DNA of 64,000 nt from positions 159,177-223,176 of the IMG/VR virus record IMGVR_UViG_3300028392_000029. One strand, 5' to 3'. This document shows, in pieces, positions 15,215 through 56,200 of this stretch. A program made the translations under genes and the position numbers. Position 1 is the stretch's first letter. Every line of letters starts with the position of its first letter. The notes under the pieces are model-generated. The model had not been told where the DNA came from and ran no database searches. It saw only the letters and a list, made by a program, of their open reading frames with translations.

Positions 15215-15508
15215 TTATTTTCCTACAGGTTTTTCGCCAGTTAAGTACGGCTTACTAAACCACAGTTGAAACCATTCTGGGGTTCCGGGACGAATATGAT
15301 GCTTACGCTCTAGCTCTTGTTTGCTCATACCAGTAACACTGATATTACTGCCTTGATTAGCACGGTATTCGTGTAGTCTAGCTTCGCCACCTAACCCGCC
15401 TAGTCCTGCTAGTGCTTTCATTTCGTGTATAGGATCACTCGGATCTAAATAGCAGTCATCTGAACTATCTTGATTTAAATCCTGCGTAGTAATTCTATAC
15501 TGTTTCAT
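15215..15508 (-). CDS. Hypothetical protein (MKQYRIT...IRPGTPEWFQLWFSKPYLTGE)
   Basis: Start set at 15508, overlapping the dps stop. Confidence 0.65.
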   Translation of the reverse strand: MKQYRITTQDLNQDSSDDCYLDPSDPIHEMKALAGLGGLGGEARLHEYRANQGSNISVTGMSKQELERKHHIRPGTPEWFQLWFSKPYLTGEKPVGK

Positions 15509-15945
15509 TTTAAACTTGACCTCAGCATCCAACTGTGCTTCTTATGTGCATCCTGTCGATCAGCTAAGAAATTACTCAGCCCGTGGTCACCATGCGCTTC
15601 AGCCATATCAAACGTAATGCGAAATATCTCAGCCATTCTGTCACTATCTGTTAATAATTCTTTTAGCATACCGCTCCAATCTGGTACATGATTTTCATCT
15701 TCTACCACAGTCAGCATACTGAATTTTTGTAAACTAGCCGGTGTATAAATCTGTAGAGCACGTAGATGTTCCGCAAACGGATCAATTGCACCATATACTT
15801 CCTCGTATATGGTTTGAAACAGTTCGTGTAACTGACCAAACAACGGTCCTTCTACATTCCAGTGAAAGTTATGCGCTTTTAGATAAAAACTAAATTCACT
15901 AGCAAAAGCTGTTTTTAATGATAAGTGATATTTGTCGTGTTCCAT
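15505..15945 (-). CDS. dps: Dps family ferritin-like DNA-protection protein
   Basis: KAHNFHWNVEG, LHELF, D-x3-E ferroxidase residues, HKKHSWML. Confidence 0.92.
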   Translation of the reverse strand: MEHDKYHLSLKTAFASEFSFYLKAHNFHWNVEGPLFGQLHELFQTIYEEVYGAIDPFAEHLRALQIYTPASLQKFSMLTVVEDENHVPDWSGMLKELLTDSDRMAEIFRITFDMAEAHGDHGLSNFLADRQDAHKKHSWMLRSSLK

Positions 15946-17240
15946 TATATACCGTATTTGTTTCTTTTGGCTTTATTTACAGGGCTAGTTTTGTTAGTGT
16001 CAGCGGGCTCTTCGCTCTTGCTAAACTTGCTAATTGTTTTTCCATCAGTGGGGACAGTTTTCATAGCCGATCGAATCTTATTATCGTCTTCTTTGGTGTA
16101 AGGATGATGTGTATTATACTTTTCAGCCCAGGTATCTTGCGGACTGTCTACAGCTTTTATACTCTCGCCGTCGGCCATGGCCATGGCCATCATCATGCGA
16201 TTCATGTGATAGATACGATCGTACCCGCCGATATCGCGTGTTCGAATTACGCCCAGGCTGGCGGCATCGTGGTGGGGGTGTCGATGACTAGTTTTACCTT
16301 CGCGTACAAATTCGTTAGCTTTCATTTCTCTTAATACCCTGTTAGCTTCTTTAATCAAATTAAAGGCTTTTAAATTCTTTTTTGGTGTACTACTATTTAC
16401 ATCAACTGTACTATTCTGTTTTGTAATAGTGCCGACCCCGGCAGCTTCTTCGTCAGTTTTAGTATATACTTGTTGCGGTTTTTTATGCCCCTCACCTCGT
16501 TCCATTTTATCAGGATCTTTGGATTTTTCTTTTTCAAAGTACTTGCGCATTTCTTCTGCACTGGTCGTTGGCTTAGCTTTAACAGGTTTAGTCATGAATC
16601 CCATTAAGCCTTCATCAGTTACTGGTTCTGCTACAGGTTTTTCTTTTTTAGCTCGTTTTACTTTTTCAGGATGTTGGCCTACTGCGGCTACTACTGTATC
16701 AAAATAGTGTTGACCATTTACTTCTAGATTAGGATCTGTACCAGCGGCTCGATAAAATGCGTCCATGTTACCAGCACGAGCCGCATTGCGTAGATCAGTT
16801 GCTGAGCTTACTCTGGGACTTGGTATATGGATGATTTTAGCAAAGTTAAAATAACCATGTGTACTTTCCTTGCCATTGTATTGATTTAATAATTTTCCAG
16901 CCCATGCCCAGTCAGTTGCATCAGTTATATAAGCTACAGTTGCACCATCTCCAACTTCTGCATAAATCTTAGAGGCCAGTGTGATAACTGTAGATTCACC
17001 TAACACATGTCCTTCAATGCTGGGATCAATTGCAGACATCCATGCTGCCTTAACATCAAACGGCAACGGATCGTTGGTGCCGGTTGTACTAGGATTAGTA
17101 CCTATGTACCATTGATGACCTGCATGTTTAACAGCTTCCCAAACTTTGGCATGCCCTTGATGCGGTGGATTGAACCGACCAAAGCAGAATGCCGCAGTTA
17201 CCTTAGTATGAGTTGATTCAAAAAGTTCACGTAAATTCAT
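15945..17240 (-). CDS. HxGH cytidylyltransferase-like nucleotidyltransferase fused to a second capsid-tagged module
   Basis: FGRFNPPHQGH, DPLPF, VSSATDLRNAA; internal MKANEFVREG at 16325. Confidence 0.75.
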   Translation of the reverse strand: MNLRELFESTHTKVTAAFCFGRFNPPHQGHAKVWEAVKHAGHQWYIGTNPSTTGTNDPLPFDVKAAWMSAIDPSIEGHVLGESTVITLASKIYAEVGDGATVAYITDATDWAWAGKLLNQYNGKESTHGYFNFAKIIHIPSPRVSSATDLRNAARAGNMDAFYRAAGTDPNLEVNGQHYFDTVVAAVGQHPEKVKRAKKEKPVAEPVTDEGLMGFMTKPVKAKPTTSAEEMRKYFEKEKSKDPDKMERGEGHKKPQQVYTKTDEEAAGVGTITKQNSTVDVNSSTPKKNLKAFNLIKEANRVLREMKANEFVREGKTSHRHPHHDAASLGVIRTRDIGGYDRIYHMNRMMMAMAMADGESIKAVDSPQDTWAEKYNTHHPYTKEDDNKIRSAMKTVPTDGKTISKFSKSEEPADTNKTSPVNKAKRNKYGI

Positions 17241-18433
17241 TATGGTGTCCAGGCTGGTATAGTTCCAGACGGAGTTTCGATACTACTACGCGGAACTAGT
17301 TTAATATGATCATCACCTTTTTTATCGTAGTGTACCCAGCCCTCTGGGTTGGTTACTTTAATCTCACCGGGATCTTTATCTAATTGTGCAATTACACTGT
17401 TCTTCAATTGCATAATATCGTCAAACAAATTAAACATTGCAGGTAGTGCTCCTGGGAACATCTTTGCACGTTCTTGTACCTTAGCCAACTGTGTTGGACT
17501 TACAATTGTTGGATTAGATTCCATCCACATCATAAAATTATGACCGACATTGTGTAATTGTCCTTGCTTACTCATAGTATTAACATATCTGTAAACAATA
17601 TTTTTAAATCCACTTACTCCGGGTAGTGGTGATAAGAATTGATCAATTTCAGCTGAATGTTTTTTAATTTCTGCTTCAACAATAGATATAGCTTGAGAAT
17701 CAACTTCCGGCTGCATCTGGGTATAGTATGGACCTAGTACGATCAGTTGAGATGTTGAATTAAACTCTTCAAAACTGTCTTTGGGTTGTTGCGTATGGTC
17801 GGCGTCTCCGAATGTTTCAAATATGCCATGACCAACAACCATTGCATGCGCTGTAGAAATTTGTTGTCCTAGATCAGTATCCTGTGCAATATGATAAACT
17901 GTTCCGCTTTTTGGATTTGGATGTAAATTATATATTCCATCAGCATCTGGGGTTGGTTGCCCTAAGAATAACCCATCGGCGTAGACAAATCCTCTAAAAT
18001 CTTCAGGGGTAGCTTTTTCAAACACTGGATGTAAGAAACTAAATTCTCTAGCAAACTCTTTACGTTGCTCTTGTTCTTCGGGGGTCTTTGGATTACCACT
18101 CTTGTTAAGAATAAAATTATAAATTCCTTGCTGTGTGGTAAACTCGTCTAATGTACTTGTACCAGTGCCGCCACGCAACCAACCATTGTGGTTAGTCAAT
18201 ATAAATGTACCATTCTCATCTCTGCCCCAATACACTTGCGGAGCACCGTCCCACTTGTATCGAACACCCTTGGCATTTTTGCCTATGGCTTTGATATGTT
18301 CCAGCGCCTTAATTGCACCAGCACTGCCATTTAAAAATGTTAGATCCTCTGGATGATTGAATGCCCTACCTACTTTTTTCTTAACTTCTTCAGCGGCTGG
18401 GGCTTCTCTTAAAAATAATTCTCTTAGTAACAC
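17240..18433 (-). CDS. KxDG covalent nucleotidyltransferase (RNA-ligase-like; DUF6267-like)
   Basis: HPEDL, YKWDGAP (motif I), NPEGWV (motif IV), IKLVPR (motif V); GTG start, MLLRELF. Confidence 0.6.
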   Translation of the reverse strand: MLLRELFLREAPAAEEVKKKVGRAFNHPEDLTFLNGSAGAIKALEHIKAIGKNAKGVRYKWDGAPQVYWGRDENGTFILTNHNGWLRGGTGTSTLDEFTTQQGIYNFILNKSGNPKTPEEQEQRKEFAREFSFLHPVFEKATPEDFRGFVYADGLFLGQPTPDADGIYNLHPNPKSGTVYHIAQDTDLGQQISTAHAMVVGHGIFETFGDADHTQQPKDSFEEFNSTSQLIVLGPYYTQMQPEVDSQAISIVEAEIKKHSAEIDQFLSPLPGVSGFKNIVYRYVNTMSKQGQLHNVGHNFMMWMESNPTIVSPTQLAKVQERAKMFPGALPAMFNLFDDIMQLKNSVIAQLDKDPGEIKVTNPEGWVHYDKKGDDHIKLVPRSSIETPSGTIPAWTP

Positions 18434-18435
18434 GA

Positions 18436-18807
18436 TTAGTCCTTATACTTGCCATCGGCAACGTGCTTACAAGTTTCATCGTGTATTTTTTTACATACTT
18501 TACTGCAAAGTTCCTCATCTAATTCGTCTGGTAGTTCGCGAATCGGAAATTTTTTAATGTACAATTTATAGCTAGCCTGTACAGGCACCTTAAACATATT
18601 TGGATGTGTTGCACGATCAGCTTTCAAACGGTCTATGCACTTGGAAATAACTGGATGGACATGACGTCGATACGATCTGTCATCGTTATGCATAAAATGA
18701 ATTAAATCATCCGGAAGGTCGTAGTTAATCTCTCTGCCGTCATTCTTTGGCGAGACAAAGTCTAAATCTTTGAAGATGGTGCCTTCTAATAGCTCATTTA
18801 TGCGCAT
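18436..18807 (-). CDS. Putative head-internal protein (MRINELLEG)
   Basis: N-terminal tag; first gene after a TAAATA promoter. Confidence 0.65.
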   Translation of the reverse strand: MRINELLEGTIFKDLDFVSPKNDGREINYDLPDDLIHFMHNDDRSYRRHVHPVISKCIDRLKADRATHPNMFKVPVQASYKLYIKKFPIRELPDELDEELCSKVCKKIHDETCKHVADGKYKD

Positions 18808-18853: not shown

Positions 18854-18859
18854 TATTTA
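18854..18859 (-). promoter_or_regulatory. TAAATA late promoter of the internal-protein operon
   Basis: GATAAATACTC, similar to the copies at 54010 and 59751. Confidence 0.6.
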
Positions 18860-18879
18860 TCGATTTTGGAATCAACACC

Positions 18880-30786: not shown

Positions 30787-30793
30787 ATACAAC

Positions 30794-31028: not shown

Positions 31029-31613
31029 TTAGTATTCGCCGCTCAGTTTGATATATACGTTAGCTCCGGCATCAACAGACCATGCTTCAATGACTTCAAG
31101 TTTAGTTGAACCAATTGCACCAACTGTGAATGGGCTAAATCCAGTTGCAAAACGCACAACTCCGCCGTTGGCAGTGGCAAATACTGGTGTTCTAACAGCA
31201 ATAGTGTCGCCTTTCAAAATAACTCTAATAATTCCGTATGCAGGTACCGCAGGCCAGCCGGTAAAAGTTAATGTAGCATTTCCTGCGAGTGTAAATTGTT
31301 GTATAGATCCGTTGGCCAAGTTAATATTTGCAGTAGTAGATACAGTTCCACCGGGGTAGAATATACCGTAAAATTGATTATGTGTACCGTTTGTGATAGA
31401 ACTTTGTAACAGATTATTTACTACAGGAGTGGTACCAGTTGCTAGATCTGCTTTTAATAGTGTATTAGTTTGTAGTGCAGTAATTTCAGACTTGGCTACT
31501 CCTAATCCCGCTGAAATAGCAGTAAAGTTGTTACGAAATCCCTGACTATCGTTGTCCTGCCCTGCTACAGGGTAAGTTGTGTTAATTGAGATATAGTTTA
31601 TTTGACTTGTCAT
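31029..31613 (-). CDS. Virion structural protein (tail/baseplate)
   Basis: YPVAGQDNDSQGFRNNF N-terminus, coiled coil, beta-rich C-terminus. Confidence 0.65.
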   Translation of the reverse strand: MTSQINYISINTTYPVAGQDNDSQGFRNNFTAISAGLGVAKSEITALQTNTLLKADLATGTTPVVNNLLQSSITNGTHNQFYGIFYPGGTVSTTANINLANGSIQQFTLAGNATLTFTGWPAVPAYGIIRVILKGDTIAVRTPVFATANGGVVRFATGFSPFTVGAIGSTKLEVIEAWSVDAGANVYIKLSGEY

Positions 31614-38600: not shown

Positions 38601-38614
38601 TCTATTCTCCTACC

Positions 38615-39085: not shown

Positions 39086-39115
39086 GGTCTATTCCGTTTA
39101 GTATATTTACCGTAA

Positions 39116-47800: not shown

Positions 47801-50800
47801 CCTAAATTAGAATTAACATATGCTAGACCTTGAGTTGTAAACAATGTAGCTAAAACAGTTAAACTATTCTGTGGGAACAAATATGTATAACCTGAGAACA
47901 AACTCTTATAGTTAGAACCAGTTACCATGTCTAGACCAATATTGTCTATAACACCACCCAACGCAGTTGTAAATTTAGTTGTGTTGTAAAAATTAGGCGG
48001 ATAGAAAGGTGTACCAGTATCAATTGTTAGCACCACTGTATAGGTTGCCGCATTAAAACTTACAACATCGTTAACTTGGAAGCGATTACCTTGTATATAG
48101 AAAGCGCAAGGAGTTTGTGGAGCACGAATATCAAGTCCGCTGTTAACACTTCCAACAACGGTAATTTGTGTACCATTAACACCTGCAATATTTTGTTCTA
48201 CCCTAGTAATTTTACCAAACAAACGTCCAGTGAATCCATCAATGAATTGACCGCCAGCAAATCGTTTGTAATTGATACTTTGACTAAAGCTACCGCTCTC
48301 TTGAGCATAAGGTGATTTAGTTTTAATTTGTCCTTCTGGATCAAGTACCATGGCAAATCCGCCGTGTCCTTGCATGCTGATCATTCTAACACGAGTAGCA
48401 TCATTACATAAGAACACATCCATTAATCTATTGTTTAGCGGAGTACTATTAATATCTAACGGATCAGTTAAGTAGTGTCTTCCGTAATTAATTGTACTGT
48501 ACAAATGCCAAGCGCCAACAGCATATGTTGTTGCGGCAGCAAAAGGATAAATCACTGTTAAGTTTAACACATTACCACTGATAGTGCTAACAACAGCTTT
48601 ACCCGGAGTTCCGGTACCGCTAGTGCTGTCAGTGAATACTAATCCTAGCCAACTTGCCGGTGCTTGACCAGTACCTAGTGTAGCTGTGATTGATCCTGTT
48701 ATACCGCTGAGTGTAATAGTTGATCCAGTAGTGGCAGCATAATCGGTACCACTATAATCAATAATACCAGTCTGTATGCCGTCAATGACACTGTCTCTAT
48801 AAAAGAACACACTGCGCCATGGGCTTTGACTTACACGATCTAATGGACGTACAATAACACGTCGGAAGTCATCACCAGAAATTGTTACGTTTGCAGATAA
48901 TTTGATTGGGTAATCTTCATAGTAGGTACCGCTTTCAACACAGATAGCAATGTTTTGTTCCGGAACAGTTTCACCGTAGTCTATTTCTTCCCCTACTCTA
49001 AAGAATCCTGGACGAACCATCCTTACTGTGATAGTGTCATATGAAGTAGTTACACCTGGAGTGTATGTTACAATTTGGCCGTATGCATTGCTAGTTCCAC
49101 CGACTAGTATTTTGGCAGGAATAATGTGTACCGCACCTGGTATACCTTGGTCTACAAATCCGTTACCGCCGTTGTCAAATGTAATAGTATACAAGCCCGA
49201 GCCAAATGTAGGGGTTGGAGCCGCACCATATCCATTTGTAATAATACTAATTAAAGTATTCATGTTTGTGGTAAATGTAGTTTTTGCAGGAGTACTTGGC
49301 GACTTTGCAACACCATTCACCGTTGTTTGTTGTCTTACTAGATCTTGGAATCGTGTTTGCTGGGTTTTATTAAGTACCTGAATACCGAGATTTTTAGCAA
49401 ACACAATACCGTCTAATGTTTCACGTAACTGAGATCCAATGGCAATAGCTTTTGCTGATGCATTTTTATAATAGCTTTTACCAGCATTGACGCTTTGATA
49501 AGTTCCGCCTGTTAGTATATCAATAATCATTGCATCAATGATGTATCCAATATCTCGATAACAAGTTGCTTCATTATAATTAAACCCGCCTGGATATGTA
49601 ACAGCGAGGTATGCAGTAGTTGCGTTTCCTATAGTATCTTTACTGTTATTTAAAATTACTTGTGCAGCCTGGGGAATACTTGCATAAATTGTTAAGTCTG
49701 GAAGAGATTGGGTATAGGTTGTATCGTTAGCAACAATATCTGTAACATAATTGAACAATGCATTAATGTCTCCGGCTGCCGCGGCACCGTCAACCCATAC
49801 TGCGTTTCTTACCTGTACAGCACTGTTACCAGTTGCAGGAGTCACTACTGAATTTGACGACACAAGAATAGCAACCGCCTGTGCATGAGTAATTGCTGCC
49901 ACTGTTGCAGTTACTTCATTGCTGGCGATTTGTCTAGTGCCACCGGCCCAATATTGATATGCGGCTCTCAGTGTTGCTGAATTACCACCATATGTTAGAT
50001 CGTAACAGACTGCTTCTAATATAGATTTCACATCTCTACTGCAAGTGGTGTTACTATATACTAAAGATGGGTAATTGGTATTAATCCAAGCAATAGTATC
50101 TGCGGCAATAAAATCAATATTGGCCAATATGGCCGAACGTGCGTGAGCAGTTGTAACTGTTATCGATGGCGGGTCAATAAATGTTGGAACAGACCTACTG
50201 GCAATACCAGCTGTTAATAAGTTAGTAATAATCCCAAACAAACTTGTAATTGTAGAACTGACGGTCACATTATTGATTACTGAGAATGTTGAATTGATAT
50301 AGCTAATCTCAGCTGACTGGATTGCAGATTTCTTCGCAATAATTGCAGTTCTAGCAGTATTCAAAGTAGCACTGGCATTGGCTGTCGTTGGCCCGTACAC
50401 TACTGGATTAGGTGTACTTACACTATTAACGATCCCGGCAATCGTTGCTATGTTGTTTGATATTGATGTGCTGACAATTGTTGAGCCGCCCAATGTTTGA
50501 TTGATATACTGATATACACTCAATTGATACACAGTAGTAGTCGAAACATTATTAATGATCGCTTGACACAATGTATTAATATAATTAATTGCGGCGACGG
50601 TGGCAGTTTTTTCATACTGAGCAATTTGTAAAGTATTGCCTATCCAATATTGAAGTCCAGAGTAAACACTGTTACTGTTACCACCGTACATAAAGTCGTA
50701 GATCAAACTCCATATAATATATTTTACATCTCGCTTACATGTGGCAGAACTGTAGCTTAGTGTTGGATAGTTTGCTAATAAGAAAGCAATAATCTCTGCT

Positions 50801-53667
50801 TGGATAAATGATAGGTTGTTCAGCAACAAATCTCTAGCACTTAGTACACCAGTGTTCGACTGATATGTTTCTATCAAGAATAAAATTACATTTGACTGTA
50901 TAGTTGATAGGCCATTTAAGATAGTTGTTCTTGATGTACCGTTGCTTGCGTAAGTTGTACCAGTGCTGTATATTGGGTTGATAGCAGTAGGCCCTGAAGC
51001 AACACCACCGTTGATAACAGTAATTACAATATTAACTAATGTACTAGCAGCCGCATTAGCAGTTCCGGTTCCTGCGCTTACTGATTGTGTGGTAGTATTG
51101 CCTGTAGTTCTAGTGTATAAATTGCCTTGAATGACTGAAGTCATTACGGCATTTAAGTGCGTATATGCGGCTGTAACTGGAACAAGTTCTGTAGCAATAG
51201 TGTTTACGTTAGTTCCTGTAAAGTATGCATCAGCTGCCGCAATGGTAGCAGTATTACCTCCATAGATCAAGTCAAAGGTTATAGCATCGATAATATATCC
51301 GGTGTCACGTCGACAATTTCCTTCGTTGTATAATGAAATAGTTCCTGGATTCAAGTTAGCATTAATGTATGCAATAGTTTCATCAATTAAAAATTGACGA
51401 TTATTTTGTAATTGTCGGGCGCTGATGTTTACACCAGAAGATGAATTGTTATAAGTCCATGTTACGCTAGGTGCACCGTTAGTACTAACATTGTTAATAA
51501 TAGTTGTGATTACATTCATGCTGGCAGTAATGGCAGCAATGGCAGCGGTATTAGTTGGAATTAATCCAATTACTTCATCTCTAGCTAGATTAATACCAGC
51601 AATGGTTTGAGCCTTTTGGCTTGATGTTACTACAGAACTGTAACTTCTAATGTAGGCAAATGCGGCAGTTATAGAACGATAATTAGTTCCAAAGATCAAA
51701 TCATCTAGTACAGCATTAACAATGATTCCCACGTCTCGACTGCATTTTGCTTGATTAAATGTAAATGTTGAACTAGCATTGGTTGTCGGTAAAGCACCAA
51801 ATACTACGCTAGGCAGACTTCCACCTGAAATAATTTTTTCTATCAATGCAGTATTAGCTTTGATATTGGCAACAGCTGATGGTAAATTTGCAAATGCCGC
51901 ATCTGACACTATGGTATTTGCAAGATCGTTTAGTGTTGCCGCTGCCTGACTTATTCCAGTTGTTTTCACAGACATAATACCAGCATGAGTTGTAACCGCA
52001 AATGGATCGCCCCCGGCTACTAGACTAATTTTAATAGTTGTGCTGTCTACTACACTGTGGATAAAATAAATGGTTCCGATAGTAATATTTCCAAAACCAG
52101 TACCGGAAAATGTAATCGGACTTCCTACCAGCATGCCAACGCTTGAATCTACAGTGATGGTGTTTACAATTGAAGTAGTACCCACAGTAGTAGTATTAAC
52201 AACCGTAGGGGTTGTTTCTAGCCCAGTAGATGCTGTGCTAAATGATAAAGCAACCTGTATACTTCTTAAATTTGAACCAAATATCAAATCATATAACAAT
52301 GCATCAATTACTTGACCTAGATATGTTTGAGTATTAGCGGTACTATACGAGAAATTTAAAACTTGATCTCTAGCATAGTTAACTGCATCGATTATTTGAG
52401 TTAAATTATTTTCAACAATATCTGAGTTATAAGCATTGAATAATATAGATGCTTGAGTTGTGGAATTAAAAGTTGTACCTAATACCGTATCATATCCTAC
52501 AGCATCTACGATATCTGAAATTATACTGCCCCATCTAGCTTTATCAAATGTAAATGTGTTTACATATTTTTTGTTAATGTATGCAATAGTTTCAGCTTGG
52601 ATGAACGATTTGTTTGCTGTTAACAAATCAGCGGCATCAGTATAGCCTATAACTCCGCTATTGCCGCCGCCGAGCGTGACACTTTGAATTGTACTAAAGG
52701 TCTGAGTAGGGCCAACTGTGTAGGCAATTCTTTGACGATATGGGCCAGGTTCTACAGTTGATAGCGCAATAAGATTTTGGGCCTGGAGCGCGGCAGCTCC
52801 AATAGTCTTATAAGCATACGCCCACGAACGACCTTCTCGACCGGGGGGAGTGTTTGTTTGTAAATCGTCACCATTAGTCTTAACATATAGATTTGTCGCG
52901 CTATAGCTAGTATTATTGTCAACATAAAATTTTGTTGCGGCTTGTAGATCATCAGCACCATTAGGTGTACCAAATCCTGCCATTGGTGACGGATGGTCGT
53001 TGAGAGCAAGCGGCCCAGTCATAGTATCGCCGCCACGGTAAACAGTATACTTGCGTTGCATTGCTTCTGTGCTTACATAGTTGCTAGACAATGTTGCGTC
53101 ATAGTCTTTATCACTAGTTTGCGGATTAGCTGGCTCGTCACGGACTCTTAATGCTTTTGAAACTGTGCCGTTATAAGTGGCCACGTAGGTATTATCGGCA
53201 TAATTTTTACTAATTGCCAGCTGTCCTAGAGTGGTAGTAATATTTTGAGAAGCGTACAGAGTATTAAACTGATCAACTAGGGCTTGGCTTGGATCTCCTA
53301 AATTACCAATACTAAATTGATTAGCGTTGATACTGGCACTTAACGATGGTTGCGGGTCGTTGTTTAGTCGAGCACTTAAGGCTGCAATTGTGAGTTTAGT
53401 AGGATCAGAGGTAGTAATACCAATACCTGTTCCAGCTACAATAGTTCTAGCAGATAATGCCCCGCCTGTAGTGTTTGCCATGATAACTTGGTTAGCACTA
53501 TACGTAGATGGTGCATCGGACAAGTTGGTAAATCTGATAGTTCCTCCAGCTCCAAAAATAGCGTATAACTCATTAAAGTTGCTGTTTACTTTTTGGAAAC
53601 TTGTACGGATACTATCGCCAGTTCCGTCATTACCTTGTACGCCAATGTCAATTACTTGTTGTGTCAT
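41863..53667 (-). CDS. Giant (3934 aa) virion structural/tail protein
   Basis: GNDGTGDSIRTSF N-terminus; ATKFYVD; helical CxRD repeats; GHDFLDIGTG; C-terminal YADLAEFY...ALAGRIPC...IEVAVGR. Confidence 0.85.
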   Translation of the reverse strand: MTQQVIDIGVQGNDGTGDSIRTSFQKVNSNFNELYAIFGAGGTIRFTNLSDAPSTYSANQVIMANTTGGALSARTIVAGTGIGITTSDPTKLTIAALSARLNNDPQPSLSASINANQFSIGNLGDPSQALVDQFNTLYASQNITTTLGQLAISKNYADNTYVATYNGTVSKALRVRDEPANPQTSDKDYDATLSSNYVSTEAMQRKYTVYRGGDTMTGPLALNDHPSPMAGFGTPNGADDLQAATKFYVDNNTSYSATNLYVKTNGDDLQTNTPPGREGRSWAYAYKTIGAAALQAQNLIALSTVEPGPYRQRIAYTVGPTQTFSTIQSVTLGGGNSGVIGYTDAADLLTANKSFIQAETIAYINKKYVNTFTFDKARWGSIISDIVDAVGYDTVLGTTFNSTTQASILFNAYNSDIVENNLTQIIDAVNYARDQVLNFSYSTANTQTYLGQVIDALLYDLIFGSNLRSIQVALSFSTASTGLETTPTVVNTTTVGTTSIVNTITVDSSVGMLVGSPITFSGTGFGNITIGTIYFIHSVVDSTTIKISLVAGGDPFAVTTHAGIMSVKTTGISQAAATLNDLANTIVSDAAFANLPSAVANIKANTALIEKIISGGSLPSVVFGALPTTNASSTFTFNQAKCSRDVGIIVNAVLDDLIFGTNYRSITAAFAYIRSYSSVVTSSQKAQTIAGINLARDEVIGLIPTNTAAIAAITASMNVITTIINNVSTNGAPSVTWTYNNSSSGVNISARQLQNNRQFLIDETIAYINANLNPGTISLYNEGNCRRDTGYIIDAITFDLIYGGNTATIAAADAYFTGTNVNTIATELVPVTAAYTHLNAVMTSVIQGNLYTRTTGNTTTQSVSAGTGTANAAASTLVNIVITVINGGVASGPTAINPIYSTGTTYASNGTSRTTILNGLSTIQSNVILFLIETYQSNTGVLSARDLLLNNLSFIQAEIIAFLLANYPTLSYSSATCKRDVKYIIWSLIYDFMYGGNSNSVYSGLQYWIGNTLQIAQYEKTATVAAINYINTLCQAIINNVSTTTVYQLSVYQYINQTLGGSTIVSTSISNNIATIAGIVNSVSTPNPVVYGPTTANASATLNTARTAIIAKKSAIQSAEISYINSTFSVINNVTVSSTITSLFGIITNLLTAGIASRSVPTFIDPPSITVTTAHARSAILANIDFIAADTIAWINTNYPSLVYSNTTCSRDVKSILEAVCYDLTYGGNSATLRAAYQYWAGGTRQIASNEVTATVAAITHAQAVAILVSSNSVVTPATGNSAVQVRNAVWVDGAAAAGDINALFNYVTDIVANDTTYTQSLPDLTIYASIPQAAQVILNNSKDTIGNATTAYLAVTYPGGFNYNEATCYRDIGYIIDAMIIDILTGGTYQSVNAGKSYYKNASAKAIAIGSQLRETLDGIVFAKNLGIQVLNKTQQTRFQDLVRQQTTVNGVAKSPSTPAKTTFTTNMNTLISIITNGYGAAPTPTFGSGLYTITFDNGGNGFVDQGIPGAVHIIPAKILVGGTSNAYGQIVTYTPGVTTSYDTITVRMVRPGFFRVGEEIDYGETVPEQNIAICVESGTYYEDYPIKLSANVTISGDDFRRVIVRPLDRVSQSPWRSVFFYRDSVIDGIQTGIIDYSGTDYAATTGSTITLSGITGSITATLGTGQAPASWLGLVFTDSTSGTGTPGKAVVSTISGNVLNLTVIYPFAAATTYAVGAWHLYSTINYGRHYLTDPLDINSTPLNNRLMDVFLCNDATRVRMISMQGHGGFAMVLDPEGQIKTKSPYAQESGSFSQSINYKRFAGGQFIDGFTGRLFGKITRVEQNIAGVNGTQITVVGSVNSGLDIRAPQTPCAFYIQGNRFQVNDVVSFNAATYTVVLTIDTGTPFYPPNFYNTTKFTTALGGVIDNIGLDMVTGSNYKSLFSGYTYLFPQNSLTVLATLFTTQGLAYVNSNLGSVSTTGKNSIAASLLTITNMINNGVTTVPATTFPTPGGTYNNPNAVKAKNILQANRIFLQQEVSAWIASTYNVNTIPNYNALKSQRDTGFIIDAICYDIMYGGNSAIYDVSLSYYGSGVSQILGEESYCVAAYGRLNTVMQQVVQNQTVSKSAGNPYTQNISLPVATATEAGLVNTEIAILTDYVADGDFDTPTTRTTPASQSWYSSQTRSSDYTTLQGLKSTLLSGSVAYLNSGAGLGINIEMGGNKSMLANDFTQINDLGYGVFATNGGLTEQVSTFSYYCYTGYWANNGGQVRSIAGSNSHGVYGLRATGYDVTELPDSVNLSYDMVQVARIYKQGLFVNEMTPTSTKQSVTLYITGYSYAPYTASELEIDHGVQSGGIVRYLISTIAHTTVTINGKNILSVTLSTAGTDSTSSTGLQYALYDGQTVTFRVLQAIKFNNIDNVKPVRPSTALQYVDNLSEIYRVIAYGLTEATGETLGANISVLQTDASFSYYKFTTDGNNITQLDPTDATKTQGSKVGDNKIAVLAVSSASTINQINKGTYVVGWGGRTHRVISYTAPLTISTGLFVSYTVTAGPTYTLVVNGLAGTISQGQILTSTGSSTGFNGTQTVSTVVISNSGGVNTATITLSSAATVNPPTGTVTFGVTANGYLSVDPNPISNLAADGTVINSMTYASSVLQTGSTTAKIVTFNIPYSPTAQLPAVDSYITIANNSNTSYNGSKQIAGIVNSSQLTVSSTSSLSVGMVVSSTSTGAYVPSGTIIQSIDSTTKFTVAPAVWIPSGSIVSSSLVATVQSITITNGGSGFDPANPPTVVFSGGGATSQAIATVTIANGSIVAYVLVSPGYGYTSQPIITVTPALGSVLLTPVLTSTATVATTASAGTNTVTMSLLYPTDPGANSNVTATTNSTLSSTGRITGTTLSLTTVASGTPVLGMVLSGSGVTTGTYITAVNSATFVGTITSTTTLTIVSGTAPSIGMVLVGTGIPTGTYIASGTGPFTLSGAATNGINIGIVGTSYTVSASQTVSSTSISGLANLLTVASATGLNAGQQITFSGSAFGTGTILTPVNGVSPNTLYYINKVAGTSIGIATSLGGSDITVSSGSVSVGTLLSLYSPNYGYGTSLAVDASTGFTSKTIIGTGPTYSVVLNFATTTAPVTGSYYLVSGNNNPLYNGFYLCSASSATTITLTYPQDPGTWSTAFNTTVTLEVTSGSSNTLGIGRPFSTLTSATLRLGRPAGSAAQITTRISTCRATGHDFLDIGTGGYVTTNYPVQIYGNPAIQSNGSNQVKEETVGRVFYVTTDENGIFRVGRFFSVDQGTGTVTFSASIALSNLDGLGFKRGVVVTQFSTDPTMTDNAPDIVPVQSATRSFIDNRLGLDYGGSPVATTSLIGPGYLALNGTLAMKGNLNLGNFSIGNLTMPSTSTSKYDGANRDYVDQSLIALNSIFKLLDVGIAAGRGLYLSGSSISYVLTVNNISGSITSGLAVYGTGFDGTQIVQSVSISGAGVATITLGTYPNSNPSGTIFFLNAVSSGSFLVYDVGLGKWKNVAAPTGDLSITYNSGTGTIVTNLNAGAIVNADVNASAAIAQSKLAMTAATTRANYTGIAQADLGIASFNSSSFSSTNGWIDLLTSTSAITGITYSKIQQMSVGTVLGNLTASAASPSEVTPTQILNAAGGISNGSFGASGAMVVGYDGSNSANNSYTVVGITSTRGANQILKTGVDGSADVANLKVGGFTVLSTSGTTVQHSTPGGIVQATPFYYMTAVGTTGSNTTITTQGTLNTSNGTLVATTFTAGAPATGGSMEGQWYLTASSQFDFSLGILKSNNLTAGSSTAAGTIDGNWSLTTGSQLRSTYADLAEFYEGDQEYPEGWVLVFGGDKEVTSTTTFNDTRLAGVVTTNPAYVMNEGQQGIKVCLALAGRIPCRVVGRVKKGDLLTTSAVEGCAVKSTNPQIGSIIGKAIQDKDYDSVGVIEVAVGRS

Positions 53668-53673: not shown

Positions 53674-53997
53674 TTAAACTCCAAAGCTAGAACCGCAACC
53701 GCATGTTGTCTGTGCGTTGGGATTCTTTATGCTGAATGTACTGCCCATTAATTCTTCTTTATAATCTATTTCAGCACCTGTGAGATACTGCATACTCATT
53801 GCGTCTACAAGCACTCGAAATTCGTCTAGGGGGATCTCAAAATCATCTTCGTTGATTATTTCATCAAAGGTAAAACCATAGCTAAAGCCGCTACAGCCGC
53901 CACCTTGAACAAAGGTACGTAATGATAAGTTAGGGTTACCTTCTTCGTATAGAAGATCTTTGATTTTTGTCTTTGCTGATTCGGAAATAGTGATCAT
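53674..53997 (-). CDS. erpA: Iron-sulfur cluster insertion protein (ErpA/IscA/HesB family)
   Basis: GGGCSGFSY and [14 protein letters not shown]. Confidence 0.93.
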
Positions 53998-54009: not shown

Positions 54010-54051
54010 TTGAGTATTTATCCAATATATTTTATAACCTTAATGTAAATA
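54010..54051. promoter_or_regulatory. Back-to-back TAAATA late promoters (erpA and the 54057 ORF)
   Basis: Minus strand TGGATAAATACTCAA (54010-54024); plus strand TAAATA at 54046-54051, 5 nt before ATG. Confidence 0.6.
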
Positions 54052-54056
54052 CAGTT

Positions 54057-54344
54057 ATGTATATTGGAACTGAATTTCGAGAAAACCACTATGTGCGCAC
54101 CAGCAATCGTGGTAAGACACACACCTATAGTCGTAAAAAAACCGTACTGGTATTACGGTGTGATTGCTGTGGAGAAGTATTTAATCGAGACAAGGGCAAT
54201 ATGGACCCTAATCGATTAAGCAACAACTATTATCATGTGTGTGGTAATTGTGATGCTAAAAAGTTTGCTCAAAGCAAAGGGATTGAAAGTAAGCATGTTT
54301 GGGACATGCCTGTAAGCAGTCTTAAGACGCTAGGCCAACTCTAG
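54057..54344 (+). CDS. Small Zn-ribbon protein
   Basis: CDCC...HVCGNC; leaderless after TAAATA. Confidence 0.7.
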   Translation: MYIGTEFRENHYVRTSNRGKTHTYSRKKTVLVLRCDCCGEVFNRDKGNMDPNRLSNNYYHVCGNCDAKKFAQSKGIESKHVWDMPVSSLKTLGQL

Positions 54345-54882
54345 CACTGATTACATTCCAGTTGATAATTTTCCACTGATTAGATAGATAGCTTTTTTTA
54401 TCGGCTTGGTAGTCTAGAGCCCAGGCATGCTCCCACCAATCTACCAGCAATACAATATCCTGTCTGATTTCGTGATTTTTGATAGTCTTAATTTTTCCGT
54501 CACGAGCCAAATACACCCATCCTGAACCTTGGATTTTCATAGCTTCTTTTTCAAAGGCATCAATAAACTTATCAAAATTTTTAAAGTGTTTATCGATAAA
54601 TTCACCGGACGACCCGCTAGGCTCGTTTGATCTTGTAGGTTTCTGAAATTGCGTAAAGTATATATTATGCAAAAAAGCCCCAGCTTCGTTGAAGTCAGGA
54701 TCCCCTTCTCCTTTATTAAAACGCTTAACATATCCGCCGTACAGTTCACTATAGTGATAGTCTATGGTTTCTTCACTCATGCTGGGTTCTAAATCATCTC
54801 TTGCATAGGGCAACTTGGTATGAACCAACGTCTTGGGGGTTTTACCCTCGTTCAGCGTGATGTGTTTAATAAAGTTGTACAT
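54322..54882 (-). CDS. sod: Fe/Mn superoxide dismutase
   Basis: LPY...LEP, YHY, LHNIYF, GSGW, DWWEHAW (His, His, Asp, His metal ligands). Confidence 0.9.
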   Translation of the reverse strand: MYNFIKHITLNEGKTPKTLVHTKLPYARDDLEPSMSEETIDYHYSELYGGYVKRFNKGEGDPDFNEAGAFLHNIYFTQFQKPTRSNEPSGSSGEFIDKHFKNFDKFIDAFEKEAMKIQGSGWVYLARDGKIKTIKNHEIRQDIVLLVDWWEHAWALDYQADKKSYLSNQWKIINWNVISARVGLAS

Positions 54883-54887
54883 AATGG

Positions 54888-54905
54888 TATTTATCAGTAT
54901 AAATA
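54888..54905. promoter_or_regulatory. Back-to-back late promoters (sod and the 54925 ORF)
   Basis: Minus strand TAAATA at 54888-54893, 5 nt before the sod ATG; plus strand TATAAATA at 54898-54905 (T4 late consensus). Confidence 0.65.
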
Positions 54906-54924
54906 CTCTGGAGGATAATATACC

Positions 54925-55188
54925 ATGTTAAAATTTATCAAAAGTTTTTTTAAGAAATCAGATCCAGTAGTGGCAGAGCCAGTTCCATATAAAGTCGAAG
55001 TTGCTCCGGTAGCAGAACTAGCACCAGTTGCTGTTCAAGCTGTAGAAGCAATGGTAGAGTCTATTATGCCAGCTGGGACAGAAGCATCAATGGCCGCACC
55101 TGTTACTAAATCTAAGAAAGCACCTGCGGCTAAGAAAGCACCAGCCGCAAAAAAGCCACGTGCTCCTAAAAAGCCTAAAGCAGAGTAA
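54925..55188 (+). CDS. Small protein with an amphipathic N-terminus and a histone-like KKAPAA tail
   Basis: GGAGG SD; MLKFIKSFF...KKAPAAKKAPAAKKPR. Confidence 0.75.
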   Translation: MLKFIKSFFKKSDPVVAEPVPYKVEVAPVAELAPVAVQAVEAMVESIMPAGTEASMAAPVTKSKKAPAAKKAPAAKKPRAPKKPKAE

Positions 55189-56200
55189 GTCGTTTAGCTT
55201 GCTCGTATAAGGCAAAACTTGCAAGATTTTTGCCTTTGCTTTCACACATAATATCGTGTGTGCTTAGAAAGCTCAGTGCCCATTCATTAACTTTTGTATT
55301 CCAATAAAAGTCTGAATGTGCTCTGAGCTTTTGCTTTTTGTATCCTGTTTCAAGTAACGCCGAGTGATTTGGGATTATATCAGTGTCATGATCCACAAGA
55401 TAGTCTTCACGAGATACTGAATAATGCATAGTAGGGCGCAGACCGCGCCAACTGTCCACGACACGCATAACACGGCTATCTGTGTTGCTGATGTATTGCC
55501 CTTCACGTATCCAGTGATGGTGTACGTCAAGCACAATAGGAATGATATCGCTAATAGTAAGACAGTCATCTAGCCCCCATGAGTTTTCTTCGTTTTCGAT
55601 TGTAATTGTATTTCGAGCTTCAGGTGATAGTCGCTGGTAAGCCCTGCGTATGCCTTCGGGGCCTTGGCGGCCTGATATGTGTACATTAATTTTAATGTCT
55701 TGGAAAGATTTACCATAGCCCATATATCGTGCCATGTCTGCGTGATATTCAAATTCTTCTATACTGCGCTGAACAATACCTTCATTATCACTAGCCAACA
55801 CAGTAAACTGGCCAGGATGAAAACTAAGGCGGACGTTGCGATCCTTAGCAATTCGACCAACGGTTCCAAACTGTTTTTCGCAATATTCAACCACATCGCT
55901 ACGTTGCCAAAAATAAGACCAGTCAGCGTGAGTATACACAGGCAGGATATCACTACTAATACGTACCATACGAAGGTTATCATCTAAATCTCCTACTCTC
56001 TCTACAAGTTTGCGGGTGGATTCGATGTTCTGAACCATTAGGTCCCATAGTTTTTGTTCTGCCACTTCTTTAGTTTGGCGTCGAAGCCAGCTGACAGTTG
56101 TACTACCGGTGTTATACTGTTTAGCATCATCTTTTGTATTAATGCCATTAACTTGATCTGCATGATCGATCCATTTACATGCGAAGCCTATACGTTTCAT
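55175..56200 (-). CDS. uvsE: UV damage endonuclease UvsE/UVDE
   Basis: RIGFACK, RISSDILP, HPGQF, NVHISG, IENEE, LDVHHH, HSD, MCESKGK; start set at MKRIGF. Confidence 0.92.
   Translation of the reverse strand: MKRIGFACKWIDHADQVNGINTKDDAKQYNTGSTTVSWLRRQTKEVAEQKLWDLMVQNIESTRKLVERVGDLDDNLRMVRISSDILPVYTHADWSYFWQRSDVVEYCEKQFGTVGRIAKDRNVRLSFHPGQFTVLASDNEGIVQRSIEEFEYHADMARYMGYGKSFQDIKINVHISGRQGPEGIRRAYQRLSPEARNTITIENEENSWGLDDCLTISDIIPIVLDVHHHWIREGQYISNTDSRVMRVVDSWRGLRPTMHYSVSREDYLVDHDTDIIPNHSALLETGYKKQKLRAHSDFYWNTKVNEWALSFLSTHDIMCESKGKNLASFALYEQAKRLTLL

What the first reader, a model, noticed from the sequence alone, without database searches (positions are those of the whole stretch)
15505..56200. 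Possible virion-associated antioxidant kit: Dps, SOD, ErpA, baseplate peroxidase and UvsE
Seen: dps sits inside the internal-protein operon. sod and erpA have late TAAATA promoters rather than sigma70 promoters. SOD has an N-terminal extension MYNFIKHITLNE/G ending in an LxE cleavage-like site, and the baseplate protein carries a peroxidase. Known chemistry: SOD converts superoxide to H2O2, peroxidase consumes H2O2, Dps removes Fe2+, and UvsE incises UV lesions. Inference: the particle or the freshly injected genome is protected against photo-oxidative damage.
Basis: inference. Interest (0 to 1): 0.6.

Follow-up and report, generated by a model that had tools for sequence, protein, structure and literature searches.

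The report
Capsid-targeted superoxide dismutase in jumbo phage
A freshwater giant phage really does encode Dps, superoxide dismutase, ErpA, a haem peroxidase and UvdE, but only the superoxide dismutase (through a T4-style capsid-targeting leader) and perhaps the peroxidase look built to travel with the virus particle, so it is not one coordinated antioxidant kit.

Summary
All five genes are real and look catalytically intact. The window is the end of a 223-kb lake phage record of the T4-distant jumbo clade (RaK2, GAP32, PA5oct).

- **SOD:** this is the strongest result. Its 12-residue leader ends in L-N-E|G, is absent from cellular SODs, and is under purifying selection in 80 of 80 relatives. 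Dozens of divergent phage SODs carry a leader of the same class. It resembles the T4 IPII/IPIII capsid-targeting sequence and the leaders of four or five proteins around dps. The phage encodes a gp21-type prohead protease. The PA5oct orthologue was found by mass spectrometry of virions.
- **Peroxidase:** it is a 540-residue module inserted in the first Ig-like domain of a multi-Ig protein at the end of the tail-fibre block. A near-identical phage and most relatives lack it.
- **Dps:** it sits, translationally coupled, inside a late operon of leader-bearing proteins but has no leader itself.
- **ErpA:** it heads the late fibre operon and has no leader.
- **UvdE:** it has no late motif or leader; sigma-70-like hexamers lie upstream.

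The finding is partly supported: SOD is probably packaged, the peroxidase is optional and possibly on the particle surface, and the other three probably act inside the infected cell.

The parts
54322..54882 (-). Fe/Mn superoxide dismutase, 186 aa, short phage-type subfamily. Codons 1-12 (54847-54882) form the leader ending L-N-E|G.
   Evidence: Pfam Sod_Fe_C and Sod_Fe_N. The best solved match is the P. gingivalis cambialistic SOD, 4e-28. The four metal ligands H43, H72, D148 and H152 are invariant. The leader is conserved in 80 of 80 relatives with variation biased to the third codon position.
54888..54894 (-). Late-type promoter motif ATAAATA for sod, five bases before the ATG. The inferred transcript starts on the A of the ATG (leaderless).
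   Evidence: The spacing is fixed in 33 of 45 unique upstream regions of relatives. There is no room for a Shine-Dalgarno site.
53674..53997 (-). ErpA/IscA-type A-type Fe-S carrier, 107 aa, first gene of the late fibre operon.
   Evidence: PF01521. Match to H. influenzae HI1723 at 4e-35, with all three cluster cysteines present. No N-terminal leader.
54015..54021 (-). Late-type promoter motif ATAAATA for erpA, followed by a GAGGG ribosome-binding site.
   Evidence: The motif is present at -22 to -27 in 40 of 41 unique upstreams of relatives.
31610..35803 (-). 1397-aa protein made of an Ig-like (He_PIG/cadherin-like) chain with an inserted haem peroxidase.
   Evidence: Synteny with the fibre-like genes is conserved in about 30 related contigs.
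34097..35719 (-). Animal-type haem peroxidase module (about residues 29-569), inserted after the first strand of the first He_PIG domain.
   Evidence: A pairwise alignment with the 860-aa orthologue of the near-identical phage L038, which lacks the module, gives 800 of 828 identical residues elsewhere. Distal Gln/His, Arg, Glu, proximal His and Asn are kept; the Asp ester site is Thr.
15505..15945 (-). Dps mini-ferritin, 146 aa, acidic, with no Lys-rich DNA-binding tail and no leader.
   Evidence: PF00210. Match to 8FF9 at 6.5e-26, with the ferroxidase pattern H-W...H...D-x-x-x-E kept. pI 5.6. The N-terminus carries no leader in any of 80 relatives.
10296..18807 (-). Late cluster of nine genes, four or five of which carry short N-terminal leaders ending in Glu (putative head-internal or ejection proteins). 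dps lies in the middle.
   Evidence: Leaders: M-R-I-N-E-L-L-E|G (18436-18807), M-L-L-R-E-L-F-L-R-E|A (17240-18433), M-N-L-R-E-L-F-E|S (15945-17240, cytidylyltransferase-like), M-K-M-H-E-L-D-E|G (14737-15213), and one at the internal Met32 of 10296-12182. The leaders are conserved in relatives while the protein bodies vary. Stops and starts overlap.
18854..18860 (-). Late-type promoter motif at the head of the operon that contains dps.
   Evidence: Kept at -51 to -53 in about 48 of 53 unique upstreams.
55175..56200 (-). UvdE UV-damage endonuclease. The likely start is Met27 of the longest ORF, which begins at 56278.
   Evidence: PF03851 at 2e-43 and phrog_8420 at 3e-84. No late motif. A TATAAT lies 29 nt upstream.
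57683..57710 (-). Sigma-70-like promoter (TTGACC, 16 nt, TATAAT) ahead of the PTPS, methyltransferase and uvdE genes.
   Evidence: 11 of 12 matches. The region as a whole holds no more sigma-70-like sites than shuffled sequence, so this is a lead only.
35886..53667 (-). Tail-fibre-like block of four genes (3934, 915, 156 and 904 aa) between erpA and the peroxidase gene.
   Evidence: The 3934-, 915- and 156-aa proteins share an N-terminus of the kind that matches baseplate-wedge and fibre-connector PHROGs. The 904-aa protein has Mtd_N and a virion structural PHROG.

Best explanation
The five genes are three different things.

1. **SOD, probably packaged.** The SOD belongs to a large phage-specific subfamily that carries an N-terminal capsid-targeting-type propeptide. 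It is made late, apparently from a leaderless mRNA that starts at its AUG. The leader docks it into the prohead core, and the gp21-type prohead protease trims it after Glu12. It then stays in the filled head like the T4 internal proteins. After that it is either ejected with the DNA or works inside the head.

2. **Peroxidase, optional and possibly exposed.** The haem peroxidase is an optional enzymatic module spliced into the first Ig-like domain of a long multi-Ig protein. That protein is encoded at the end of the late tail-fibre operon, so the module is most likely displayed on the particle surface. There it would use ambient H2O2 to oxidise a substrate. It would not act as a scavenger.

3. 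**Dps, ErpA and UvdE, intracellular.** These are helper enzymes of the infected cell. Dps and ErpA ride on late operons. UvdE sits in a sigma-70-type operon. None has a targeting leader.

What is shown: gene identities, intact catalytic residues, motif positions and their conservation, the leader and its conservation, the presence of the protease, and the modular gain and loss of the peroxidase. What is inferred: packaging, cleavage, the leaderless transcript start, surface display, and all physiological roles.
For: **SOD leader**
- It is absent from canonical SODs and conserved in 80 of 80 relatives. Per-site variation is 0.31 at third codon positions against 0.11 and 0.07 at the first two.
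- PA5oct gp223 is only 41% identical but keeps the same I-K..I..(L/I)-x-E|(G/A) leader.
- Among representatives of 50%-identity clusters that have an N-terminal extension of 8 or more residues, 49 of 65 short-type SODs have a hydrophobic-x-E inside it. Only 2 of 10 canonical SODs do.
- One SOD representative starts M-K-I-R-Q-L-F-E|A. That is the same leader as M-K-L-R-Q-L-F-E|A on relatives of the 431-aa enzyme in the dps operon.

**T4 parallel**
- T4 ipII and ipIII start M-K-T-Y-Q-E-F-I-A-E|A.
- In T4 the first 10 residues suffice for packaging, and residues 8 and 10 govern processing (PMC9026906).
- T4-family internal proteins are diverse and share only the targeting sequence (PMC3012670).
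- A Peptidase_S77 prohead protease is encoded in this genome.
- PA5oct proteins with similar leaders (gp333, gp247, gp246) were all detected by virion mass spectrometry.

**Late motif**
- It is enriched and tied to structural genes.

**Peroxidase**
- Catalytic residues are intact.
- The module is an insertion or deletion between near-identical phages.
- The carrier folds as a chain of Ig/cadherin-like domains and matches phage 'Ig' proteins.

**Dps, ErpA and UvdE**
- None has a leader in any relative.
Against: - No proteome, N-terminal sequence or transcript start exists for this phage.
- The PA5oct virion mass spectrometry also picked up plainly non-structural enzymes (GTP cyclohydrolase, QueD, FtsH, ligase). 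Detection there is therefore weak evidence.
- A hydrophobic-x-E-small pattern near the N-terminus occurs in about 10% of this phage's proteins by a loose pattern search (20 of 209).
- The Vibrio phage 2.275.O SOD and one branch of the family (P0126-P0129) lack the leader.
- In PA5oct and the Vibrio phage, sod sits among chaperone and translation genes, as an ordinary metabolic gene would.
- A metallo-enzyme pushed through a tail tube would probably lose its metal.
- The Ig-like carrier has no demonstrated virion homologue. Its model is only moderate (pLDDT 62).
Confidence: 0.5

Rival explanations
1. Plain virocell stress management. All five are cytoplasmic auxiliary genes that protect the infected cell and the replicating DNA from oxidative and UV damage in sunlit lake water. 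None is a virion component. The SOD leader then has some other role, such as oligomerisation, stability or regulated turnover.
For: - The window also encodes ClpA/B, DnaJ, peptide deformylase, Cpn10 and PhoH.
- Dps, ErpA and UvdE have canonical N-termini.
- In PA5oct and Vibrio phage 2.275.O, sod lies among ClpS, Hsp20, S21 and IF3 genes.
- The PA5oct virion mass spectrometry includes obvious non-structural enzymes (the paper counts 7 'virion-unrelated enzymes').
- A radical-SAM enzyme and a 2OG-Fe(II) oxygenase lie nearby and could be clients of ErpA.
- Lake metatranscriptome contigs identical to erpA, sod and uvdE exist. They show presence only.
Against: - This reading does not explain why a leader ending in hydrophobic-x-E is kept across SODs down to about 35% identity, or why it is interchangeable with the leaders of the proteins around dps.
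- It does not explain why the peroxidase is embedded in an Ig-like protein within the fibre operon.
Confidence: 0.28
2. The full kit as proposed by the first reader. Dps, SOD, ErpA, peroxidase and UvdE are all carried in or on the particle and together protect it, or the freshly injected genome, from photo-oxidative damage.
For: - dps is translationally coupled on both sides to genes of the operon that encodes the leader-bearing proteins, behind a conserved late motif.
- erpA and sod have late motifs.
- The order uvdE, sod, erpA, fibre block is kept in 72-78 of 80 relatives.
- Packaged SOD is known from giant viruses of eukaryotes (PMC9405923).
Against: - Dps, ErpA and UvdE have no leader in any relative.
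- UvdE lacks a late motif.
- ErpA is an Fe-S carrier with no antioxidant chemistry of its own.
- The peroxidase is absent from 4 of 5 large relatives that keep SOD, three of which also hold Dps, including a 94%-complete genome. It is also absent from a near-identical phage.
- No peroxiredoxin or glutaredoxin is present in the 223-kb record.
- An SOD inside the head and a peroxidase outside cannot pass H2O2 between them in any useful way.
Confidence: 0.07
3. The peroxidase module is an offensive or adhesive tool on a fibre or whisker. It would oxidise or cross-link a host surface or matrix component, or act as a peroxinectin-like adhesin. It has nothing to do with protecting the phage.
For: - Its closest solved relatives are a bacterial lactoperoxidase-like enzyme (8S6C, 1e-82) and Dictyostelium peroxinectin A (1e-63), which are oxidant-forming or adhesive enzymes.
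- It sits where phages place receptor-binding or depolymerase modules.
- The same insertion site holds a different 195-aa insert in another relative, L232.
- It comes and goes between close relatives, as host-range modules do.
Against: No substrate or host is known. Display on the particle is not shown. The He_PIG carrier could equally be a decoration protein.
Confidence: 0.4

Closest known systems
T4 internal proteins IPI, IPII, IPIII and Alt with their capsid targeting sequence, processed by prohead protease gp21
   Same: Both have a short N-terminal leader ending in hydrophobic-x-E followed by a small residue. In both cases diverse, unrelated proteins share only the leader and are clustered in late operons. 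A Peptidase_S77 protease is encoded in the genome.
   Different: The cargo here is a metallo-enzyme of oxidative-stress defence, and apparently also a cytidylyltransferase-like enzyme. The leader sequences differ from the T4 one. No packaging or cleavage has been measured.
Virion-packaged Cu,Zn-SODs of giant viruses of eukaryotes (Megavirus chilensis; cited in PMC9405923)
   Same: A virus-encoded SOD is proposed or shown to travel in the particle and to act at the start of infection.
   Different: Those are Cu,Zn enzymes in nucleocytoplasmic large DNA viruses with a different packaging route. This one is an Fe/Mn-type SOD with a tailed-phage propeptide.
Pseudomonas phage PA5oct gp223 (annotated as a hypothetical protein; sodB in the sister phages MIJ3 and Callisto)
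   Same: It is the orthologue: 41% identical, with the same metal ligands and a leader of the same class ending I-A-E|A. It was detected by ESI-MS/MS of virions.
   Different: It sits in a different genomic neighbourhood, among chaperone and translation genes. The held main text of the PA5oct paper never mentions superoxide or gp223; its supplements are not held.
Bacterial and protist animal-type haem peroxidases (solved structures 8S6C 'lactoperoxidase' and 6ERC peroxinectin A)
   Same: The fold family is the same, and the catalytic Gln/His, Arg, Glu, proximal His and Asn are kept.
   Different: Here the enzyme is an insert inside an Ig-like domain of a phage protein. The Asp that makes the second haem ester link is Thr, as in the one-link Dictyostelium enzyme. 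No PHROG family covers it, and among cultured phage records tblastn matched only a C-terminal piece of the carrier (in Agrobacterium phage Atu_ph07), never the peroxidase domain.
T4 late promoters (TATAAATA)
   Same: There is an AT-rich motif of -10 type without a -35 element. It is enriched before structural genes at about -23 to -37 from the start codon.
   Different: The first base is mostly G or C, not T. The canonical octamer occurs only seven times in the genome. I did not look for the late sigma factor or its co-activator.

Membership tests
Fe/Mn superoxide dismutase | Four metal ligands (His, His, Asp, His) | tested here: met
   H43, H72, D148 and H152 are invariant in the alignment with the PA5oct and Vibrio phage homologues and align with the ligands of solved SODs.
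Fe/Mn superoxide dismutase | Complete two-domain architecture (N-terminal helical hairpin plus C-terminal alpha/beta domain) | tested here: inconclusive
   The C-domain matches in full. The N-domain matches only profile positions 6-40 of 82, and the usual HHxxHH stretch is reduced to a single His. No fold was computed.
T4-type capsid-targeted, protease-trimmed head protein | N-terminal leader that is absent from cellular homologues | tested here: met
   There are 18-23 residues before the conserved LPY core. Canonical SODs start 3-6 residues before it.
T4-type capsid-targeted, protease-trimmed head protein | Leader ends in the gp21-type cleavage pattern (L/I)-x-E | tested here: met
   L-N-E|G here and I-A-E|A in PA5oct. 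The pattern occurs in 49 of 65 extended family representatives.
T4-type capsid-targeted, protease-trimmed head protein | A gp21-family prohead protease is encoded | tested here: met
   Peptidase_S77 at 7e-26, genome coordinates 94110-94745, beside the scaffold and major capsid genes.
T4-type capsid-targeted, protease-trimmed head protein | The protein is present in purified virions with a trimmed N-terminus | not testable with these tools
   The only evidence is indirect: the PA5oct orthologue carries the ESI-MS/MS note. The supplementary peptide table is not held.
Dps mini-ferritin | Ferroxidase-centre residues (two His, Asp, Glu) | tested here: met
   The pattern H-W-N-V-x-G...L-H, then D-P-F-A-E, aligns with solved Dps proteins.
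Dps mini-ferritin | Lys-rich terminal tail for DNA binding (E. coli type) | tested here: not met
   The protein starts at helix A and has pI 5.6. This fits an iron and H2O2 detoxifier better than a DNA coat.
A-type Fe-S carrier (ErpA/IscA/SufA) | Three cluster-binding cysteines (C-x-G-F ... C-G-C) | tested here: met
   All three align with HI1723 at 4e-35.
Animal-type haem peroxidase | Distal Gln and His, catalytic Arg, proximal His with Asn partner | tested here: met
   The motifs W-G-Q-F-I-T-H-E, R-G-T-E, R-F-G-H-S and N-I-Q-R-G-R-D align with 8S6C and 6ERC.
Animal-type haem peroxidase | Two ester links to haem (Asp and Glu) | tested here: not met
   The Glu is present, but the Asp position is Thr. 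At most one link is possible, as in peroxinectin A, which has Ile there.
Baseplate protein | Homology to a known baseplate component, or a baseplate-type N-terminal anchor | tested here: not met
   There is no PHROG hit. The N-terminus is the first strand of a He_PIG domain and is unlike the shared anchor of the neighbouring 3934-, 915- and 156-aa proteins. Fold matches are cadherin/Ig chains and phage 'Ig' proteins.
UvdE UV-damage endonuclease | Full-length match to the family profile | tested here: met
   PF03851 at 2e-43 over profile positions 16-257 of 275, and phrog_8420 at 2.7e-84. I did not check the metal ligands one by one.
T4-like late promoter | TATAAATA-type element enriched before late (structural) genes | tested here: met
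   ATAAATA occurs 24 times against 1.3 expected. Seven of ten carriers tested outside the window hit structural PHROGs.
T4-like late promoter | Late sigma factor (gp55 type) and co-activator encoded | not tested
   I saw only a weak DsbA-like hit at 9922-10179. The record is about 60% complete.

The most novel reading that the evidence does not exclude
A very large, mostly freshwater family of T4-related jumbo phages uses a T4-style capsid-targeting propeptide to load an active Fe/Mn superoxide dismutase into the head, next to other leader-tagged enzymes such as a cytidylyltransferase-like protein. The SOD is made from a leaderless late mRNA and is either delivered with the DNA or kept inside the head. 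A subset of these phages also displays a working haem peroxidase on an Ig-like surface protein. Together that would be the first redox enzymes shown as structural cargo of a tailed phage.
Probability: 0.35. Interest if true: 0.78.

Novelty: new variant of a known kind. Interest (0 to 1): 0.62.

Why it matters
- **New kind of cargo.** Known phage internal or ejected proteins are anti-restriction factors, polymerases or host-takeover enzymes. An antioxidant enzyme delivered with the genome would be a new class of cargo. It would suggest that oxidative stress at the moment of entry, or during the free-living phase in sunlit water, is a real selective force on phages.
- **A usable search tag.** The leader gives a simple sequence tag for finding further packaged enzymes in uncultured jumbo phages.
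- **A testable model.** The SOD family is very abundant: 3545 clusters at 90% identity. It has a cultured member, PA5oct, so the idea can be tested directly.
- **First of its kind here.** I found no other haem peroxidase in any phage protein, either in the phage collections or in the paper library.

Tried and rejected
**Rival readings I tested and rejected**
- Wrong start codon for sod. An in-frame TTG at codon 19 would give a canonical N-terminus. I rejected this because the 18 codons upstream are conserved as protein, with synonymous-type variation, in all relatives.

**Searches that came back empty or uninformative**
- megablast of 15 kb against cultured phages found no match. Distant blastn hit only ClpA/B.
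- tblastn of the whole peroxidase protein found only a C-terminal piece in Agrobacterium phage Atu_ph07.
- The DUF6267 protein has no homologue in PA5oct or Vibrio phage 2.275.O. Its only hit among cultured phages is a weak one in Prochlorococcus phage P-HM1.
- Searching SOD in five peroxidase-less contigs gave nothing, because those fragments end before the sod region. I replaced this with a search of five larger relatives.
- The PA5oct supplementary peptide table is not held.
- The library returned no papers on phage haem peroxidase, packaged Dps or phage Fe/Mn SOD.
- No peroxiredoxin or glutaredoxin is present in the record.

**Results with limited value**
- Overall counts of sigma-70-like and terminator-like sites do not exceed shuffled sequence. 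Only the single 11-of-12 site is mentioned.
- Laid reads were contigs only. They gave no transcript ends and no timing.
- The fold model of the Ig-like carrier is of moderate quality (pLDDT 62, pTM 0.32). It supports only 'chain of Ig/cadherin-like domains'.

- No alternative genetic code was used.
- The single read-laying run used 2,701 letters.

Full report
**What the window is.** The 64-kb window is the last part of a 223,176-base IMG/VR virus record that CheckV rates about 60% complete. Its major capsid protein is of the T4 gp23 family. That protein is 68-73% identical to those of the T4-distant jumbo phages Phosso, Vibrio phage 2.275.O, CBB, GAP32 and PA5oct. Near-identical DNA occurs in several freshwater lake metagenomes. 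Almost all genes in the window run on the - strand.

**Are the five genes there?** Yes, all five, with intact catalytic residues.
- **Dps (15505-15945).** It matches the ferritin-like family and solved Dps proteins, and the ferroxidase residues are present. It is acidic and has no Lys-rich tail.
- **ErpA (53674-53997).** It matches H. influenzae HI1723 at 4e-35 and keeps all three cysteines.
- **SOD (54322-54882).** It has both SOD domains and all four metal ligands. Its N-terminal hairpin is shortened.
- **UvdE.** It is a strong family match.
- **Peroxidase.** The 1397-aa ORF 31610-35803 holds an animal-type haem peroxidase domain (3e-114). The distal Gln/His, Arg, the ester-forming Glu, the proximal His and Asn are all kept. 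The Asp that forms the second ester link is Thr.

**The late promoter claim.**
- The canonical T4 octamer is rare, seven copies in the genome.
- ATAAATA, usually written [G/C]ATAAATA[C/T], occurs 24 times in the 80 nt upstream of genes against 1.3 expected.
- Seven of ten motif-bearing genes outside the window hit structural PHROGs: baseplate hub, a gp6-like wedge protein, tail spike and virion proteins.
- Inside the window the motif also precedes a holin-like gene and fibre-like genes.
- erpA has the motif at -23, followed by a GAGGG ribosome-binding site. This is kept in 40 of 41 distinct upstream regions of relatives.
- sod has the motif five bases before its ATG, with no room for a ribosome-binding site. 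This spacing is kept in 33 of 45 distinct upstreams.
- From my own knowledge of T4 (not a tool result), late transcripts start about six bases after the motif. If that rule applies here, the sod mRNA begins with its AUG. That is an inference.
- dps has only a weak variant nearby. However, the operon it sits in is headed by a conserved motif before the 123-aa gene.
- uvdE has no late motif. It lies behind a sigma-70-like site with 11 of 12 matches, and a TATAAT lies close to its own start.

**The SOD leader: the main result.** The ORF starts 23 residues before the LPY that begins the SOD core. The first twelve residues end in L-N-E, followed by Gly.
- **Not a mis-called start.** All 80 fetched relatives keep the leader. 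Its variation is concentrated at third codon positions: 0.31 per site against 0.11 and 0.07.
- **Kept in a distant orthologue.** PA5oct gp223 is only 41% identical but has a leader of the same class ending I-A-E followed by Ala.
- **Widespread in the family.** A search of 1.8 billion cluster representatives shows that many divergent members of this short SOD subfamily (35-65% identity) start with an amphipathic leader ending hydrophobic-x-E. Among representatives with an extension of at least eight residues, 49 of 65 short-type SODs have it, against 2 of 10 canonical SODs.
- **Interchangeable with other leaders.** Some SOD leaders are practically the same as those on unrelated proteins. One representative starts M-K-I-R-Q-L-F-E|A. 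Relatives of the 431-aa cytidylyltransferase-like protein next to dps start M-K-L-R-Q-L-F-E|A.
- **Exceptions.** A branch without the leader carries C-terminal extensions instead.

**Why this looks like capsid targeting.**
- T4 ipII and ipIII both start M-K-T-Y-Q-E-F-I-A-E, followed by Ala.
- In T4 the first ten residues are sufficient for packaging, residues 8 and 10 govern cleavage by gp21, and the Alt propeptide is 7 residues long (PMC9026906).
- Internal proteins of T-even phages are a diverse set that share only this targeting sequence (PMC3012670).
- This phage encodes a Peptidase_S77 (gp21-type) prohead protease next to its scaffold and capsid genes.
- In PA5oct, three proteins with similar leaders (gp333, gp247, gp246) carry the ESI-MS/MS note, and so does the SOD orthologue gp223. 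The paper states that this mass spectrometry was done on virion particles and found 93 products, seven of them 'virion-unrelated enzymes'.
- That last point, together with notes on GTP cyclohydrolase, QueD, FtsH and ligase, means the detection alone is weak. Its value lies in agreeing with the leader.

**The 'internal-protein operon' and Dps.**
- Genes from 18807 down to about 10296 form a tight late cluster.
- The 123-, 397-, 431- and 158-aa products, and the 628-aa ORF read from its Met32, begin with short leaders of the form M-x-x-x-E-L-x-E followed by Gly, Ser or Ala.
- In the whole 223-kb record the strict E-L-x-E form near the N-terminus occurs only in this cluster.
- Relatives keep the leaders while the protein bodies behind them change. 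That is the T4 internal-protein pattern.
- dps sits in the middle. Its ATG overlaps the stop of the 431-aa gene (TAATG), and its stop overlaps the next ATG (ATGA).
But Dps starts directly at helix A in all 80 relatives, with no leader.
- None of the cultured relatives with virion proteomes carries a Dps. Packaging of Dps is therefore unsupported. Late co-expression is all that is shown.

**The peroxidase carrier.**
- The gene is the fifth in a late operon: erpA, then a 3934-aa protein, then 915-, 156- and 904-aa fibre-like proteins, then the 1397-aa protein. A 194-aa fibre-like gene with its own late motif follows.
- This order is kept in about 30 related contigs.
- A near-identical phage (L038) has an 860-aa orthologue that is 800 of 828 identical outside the module. 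It lacks residues 29-569 and has four residues in their place.
- The module sits just after the first strand of the first He_PIG domain.
- Of 21 further loci found with the carrier alone, about 16 lack the module. One has a different 195-residue insert at the same site.
- The carrier folds, at moderate confidence, as a chain of Ig/cadherin-like domains. It matches phage proteins named 'Ig' and uncharacterised proteins of Atu_ph07 and K64-1.
- It has no PHROG hit and no baseplate-type N-terminal anchor.
- I therefore call it a probable exposed virion protein (fibre, whisker or decoration) with an optional enzymatic head, not a baseplate protein.

**Is it one kit?** No.
- SOD is in all five large relatives I checked, and Dps is in at least three of them.
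- The peroxidase is in only one of the five. It is absent from a 345-kb, 94%-complete genome.
- Pattern scans found at least 598 SOD stretches and 441 Dps stretches in viral contigs, but only 39 peroxidase stretches. These counts are sensitive to sequence identity, so they are only a rough guide.
- uvdE, sod and erpA are syntenic in 72-78 of 80 loci. They are driven by different promoter types, though.
- ErpA is an Fe-S carrier. A radical-SAM protein and a 2OG-Fe(II) oxygenase nearby are plausible clients.
- An SOD inside the head and a peroxidase outside the particle cannot form the proposed relay.

**Expression in nature.** Contigs of lake metatranscriptomes are identical to erpA, part of sod and parts of uvdE. 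These are contigs, DNA carry-over cannot be excluded, and they say nothing about timing.

**Verdict.** My estimates:
- about 0.6 that the SOD is a packaged, protease-trimmed head protein;
- about 0.5 that the peroxidase carrier is on the particle;
- below 0.15 each that Dps, ErpA or UvdE are packaged.

I found no paper in the library describing a leader-tagged phage SOD or a phage haem peroxidase. Packaged SOD is known only from giant viruses of eukaryotes.

Noticed in passing
window 54878-54905, - strand: The sod late motif ends five bases before the ATG and there is no ribosome-binding site. This is conserved across relatives and implies a leaderless late mRNA. Related phages encode IF3 and ribosomal protein S21, which could bear on how leaderless mRNAs are translated.
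   Followed up: partly
window 54925-55188, + strand: An 87-aa basic protein (pI 9.9) has a Lys/Ala/Pro-rich tail like histone H1. It is transcribed divergently from sod, from one of the few perfect TATAAATA sites, with a GGAGG ribosome-binding site. Its N-terminus M-L-K-F-I-K resembles the start of the SOD leader. tblastn found it in only 22 of 80 relatives.
   Followed up: partly
window 54057-54344, + strand: A 95-aa ORF with two CxxC pairs (zinc-ribbon-like) converges on sod and overlaps its 3' end by 23 bases. It is conserved in 78 of 80 relatives and has a GTAAATA 11 bases before its ATG.
   Followed up: no
window 15945-17240, - strand: A 431-aa protein has a cytidylyltransferase-like N-domain and a capsid-targeting-like leader. 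It is a candidate packaged or injected nucleotidyltransferase. Relatives keep the leader but swap the body.
   Followed up: partly
L232:1385-3910 and upstream (IMGVR_UViG_3300020205_001273): In this relative the Ig-like carrier has a different 195-residue insert at the same site where the window's protein holds the peroxidase. That suggests a hot spot for swapping modules.
   Followed up: no
window 19490-23080 and 29535-29927, - strand: A set of protein-folding genes is present: ClpA/B-type unfoldase (757 aa), peptide deformylase, DnaJ, and further on a Cpn10-like co-chaperonin.
   Followed up: no
window 30280-30792, - strand: A free-standing 170-aa ORF matches only a piece of the DNA polymerase III alpha NTPase domain. 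It is conserved in all relatives and in PA5oct.
   Followed up: no
window 56351-63849, - strand: Upstream of uvdE lie a PTPS/QueD-like gene, a methyltransferase-like gene, a weak radical-SAM match and a 2OG-Fe(II) oxygenase. These may form a base- or nucleotide-modification set that would need iron and Fe-S supply.
   Followed up: no
L221 (T4 NC_000866, 64939-66415): In T4 the UV-repair gene denV lies directly beside the internal-protein genes ipII and ipIII. This echoes the closeness of repair and internal-protein genes seen here.
   Followed up: no
genome 65929-78057 and 117119-131863; window 41863-53667: The record holds three giant ORFs of 4042, 4914 and 3934 aa. The one in the window has a fibre-type N-terminal anchor but no Pfam family at all.
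   Followed up: no
window 12091-13170, - strand: The 359-aa protein starts M-D-M-K-R-I-L-Q-A-M-D|G, which is a leader-like N-terminus ending in Asp rather than Glu. In T4, an Asp at that position allows targeting but blocks cleavage (PMC9026906).
   Followed up: no
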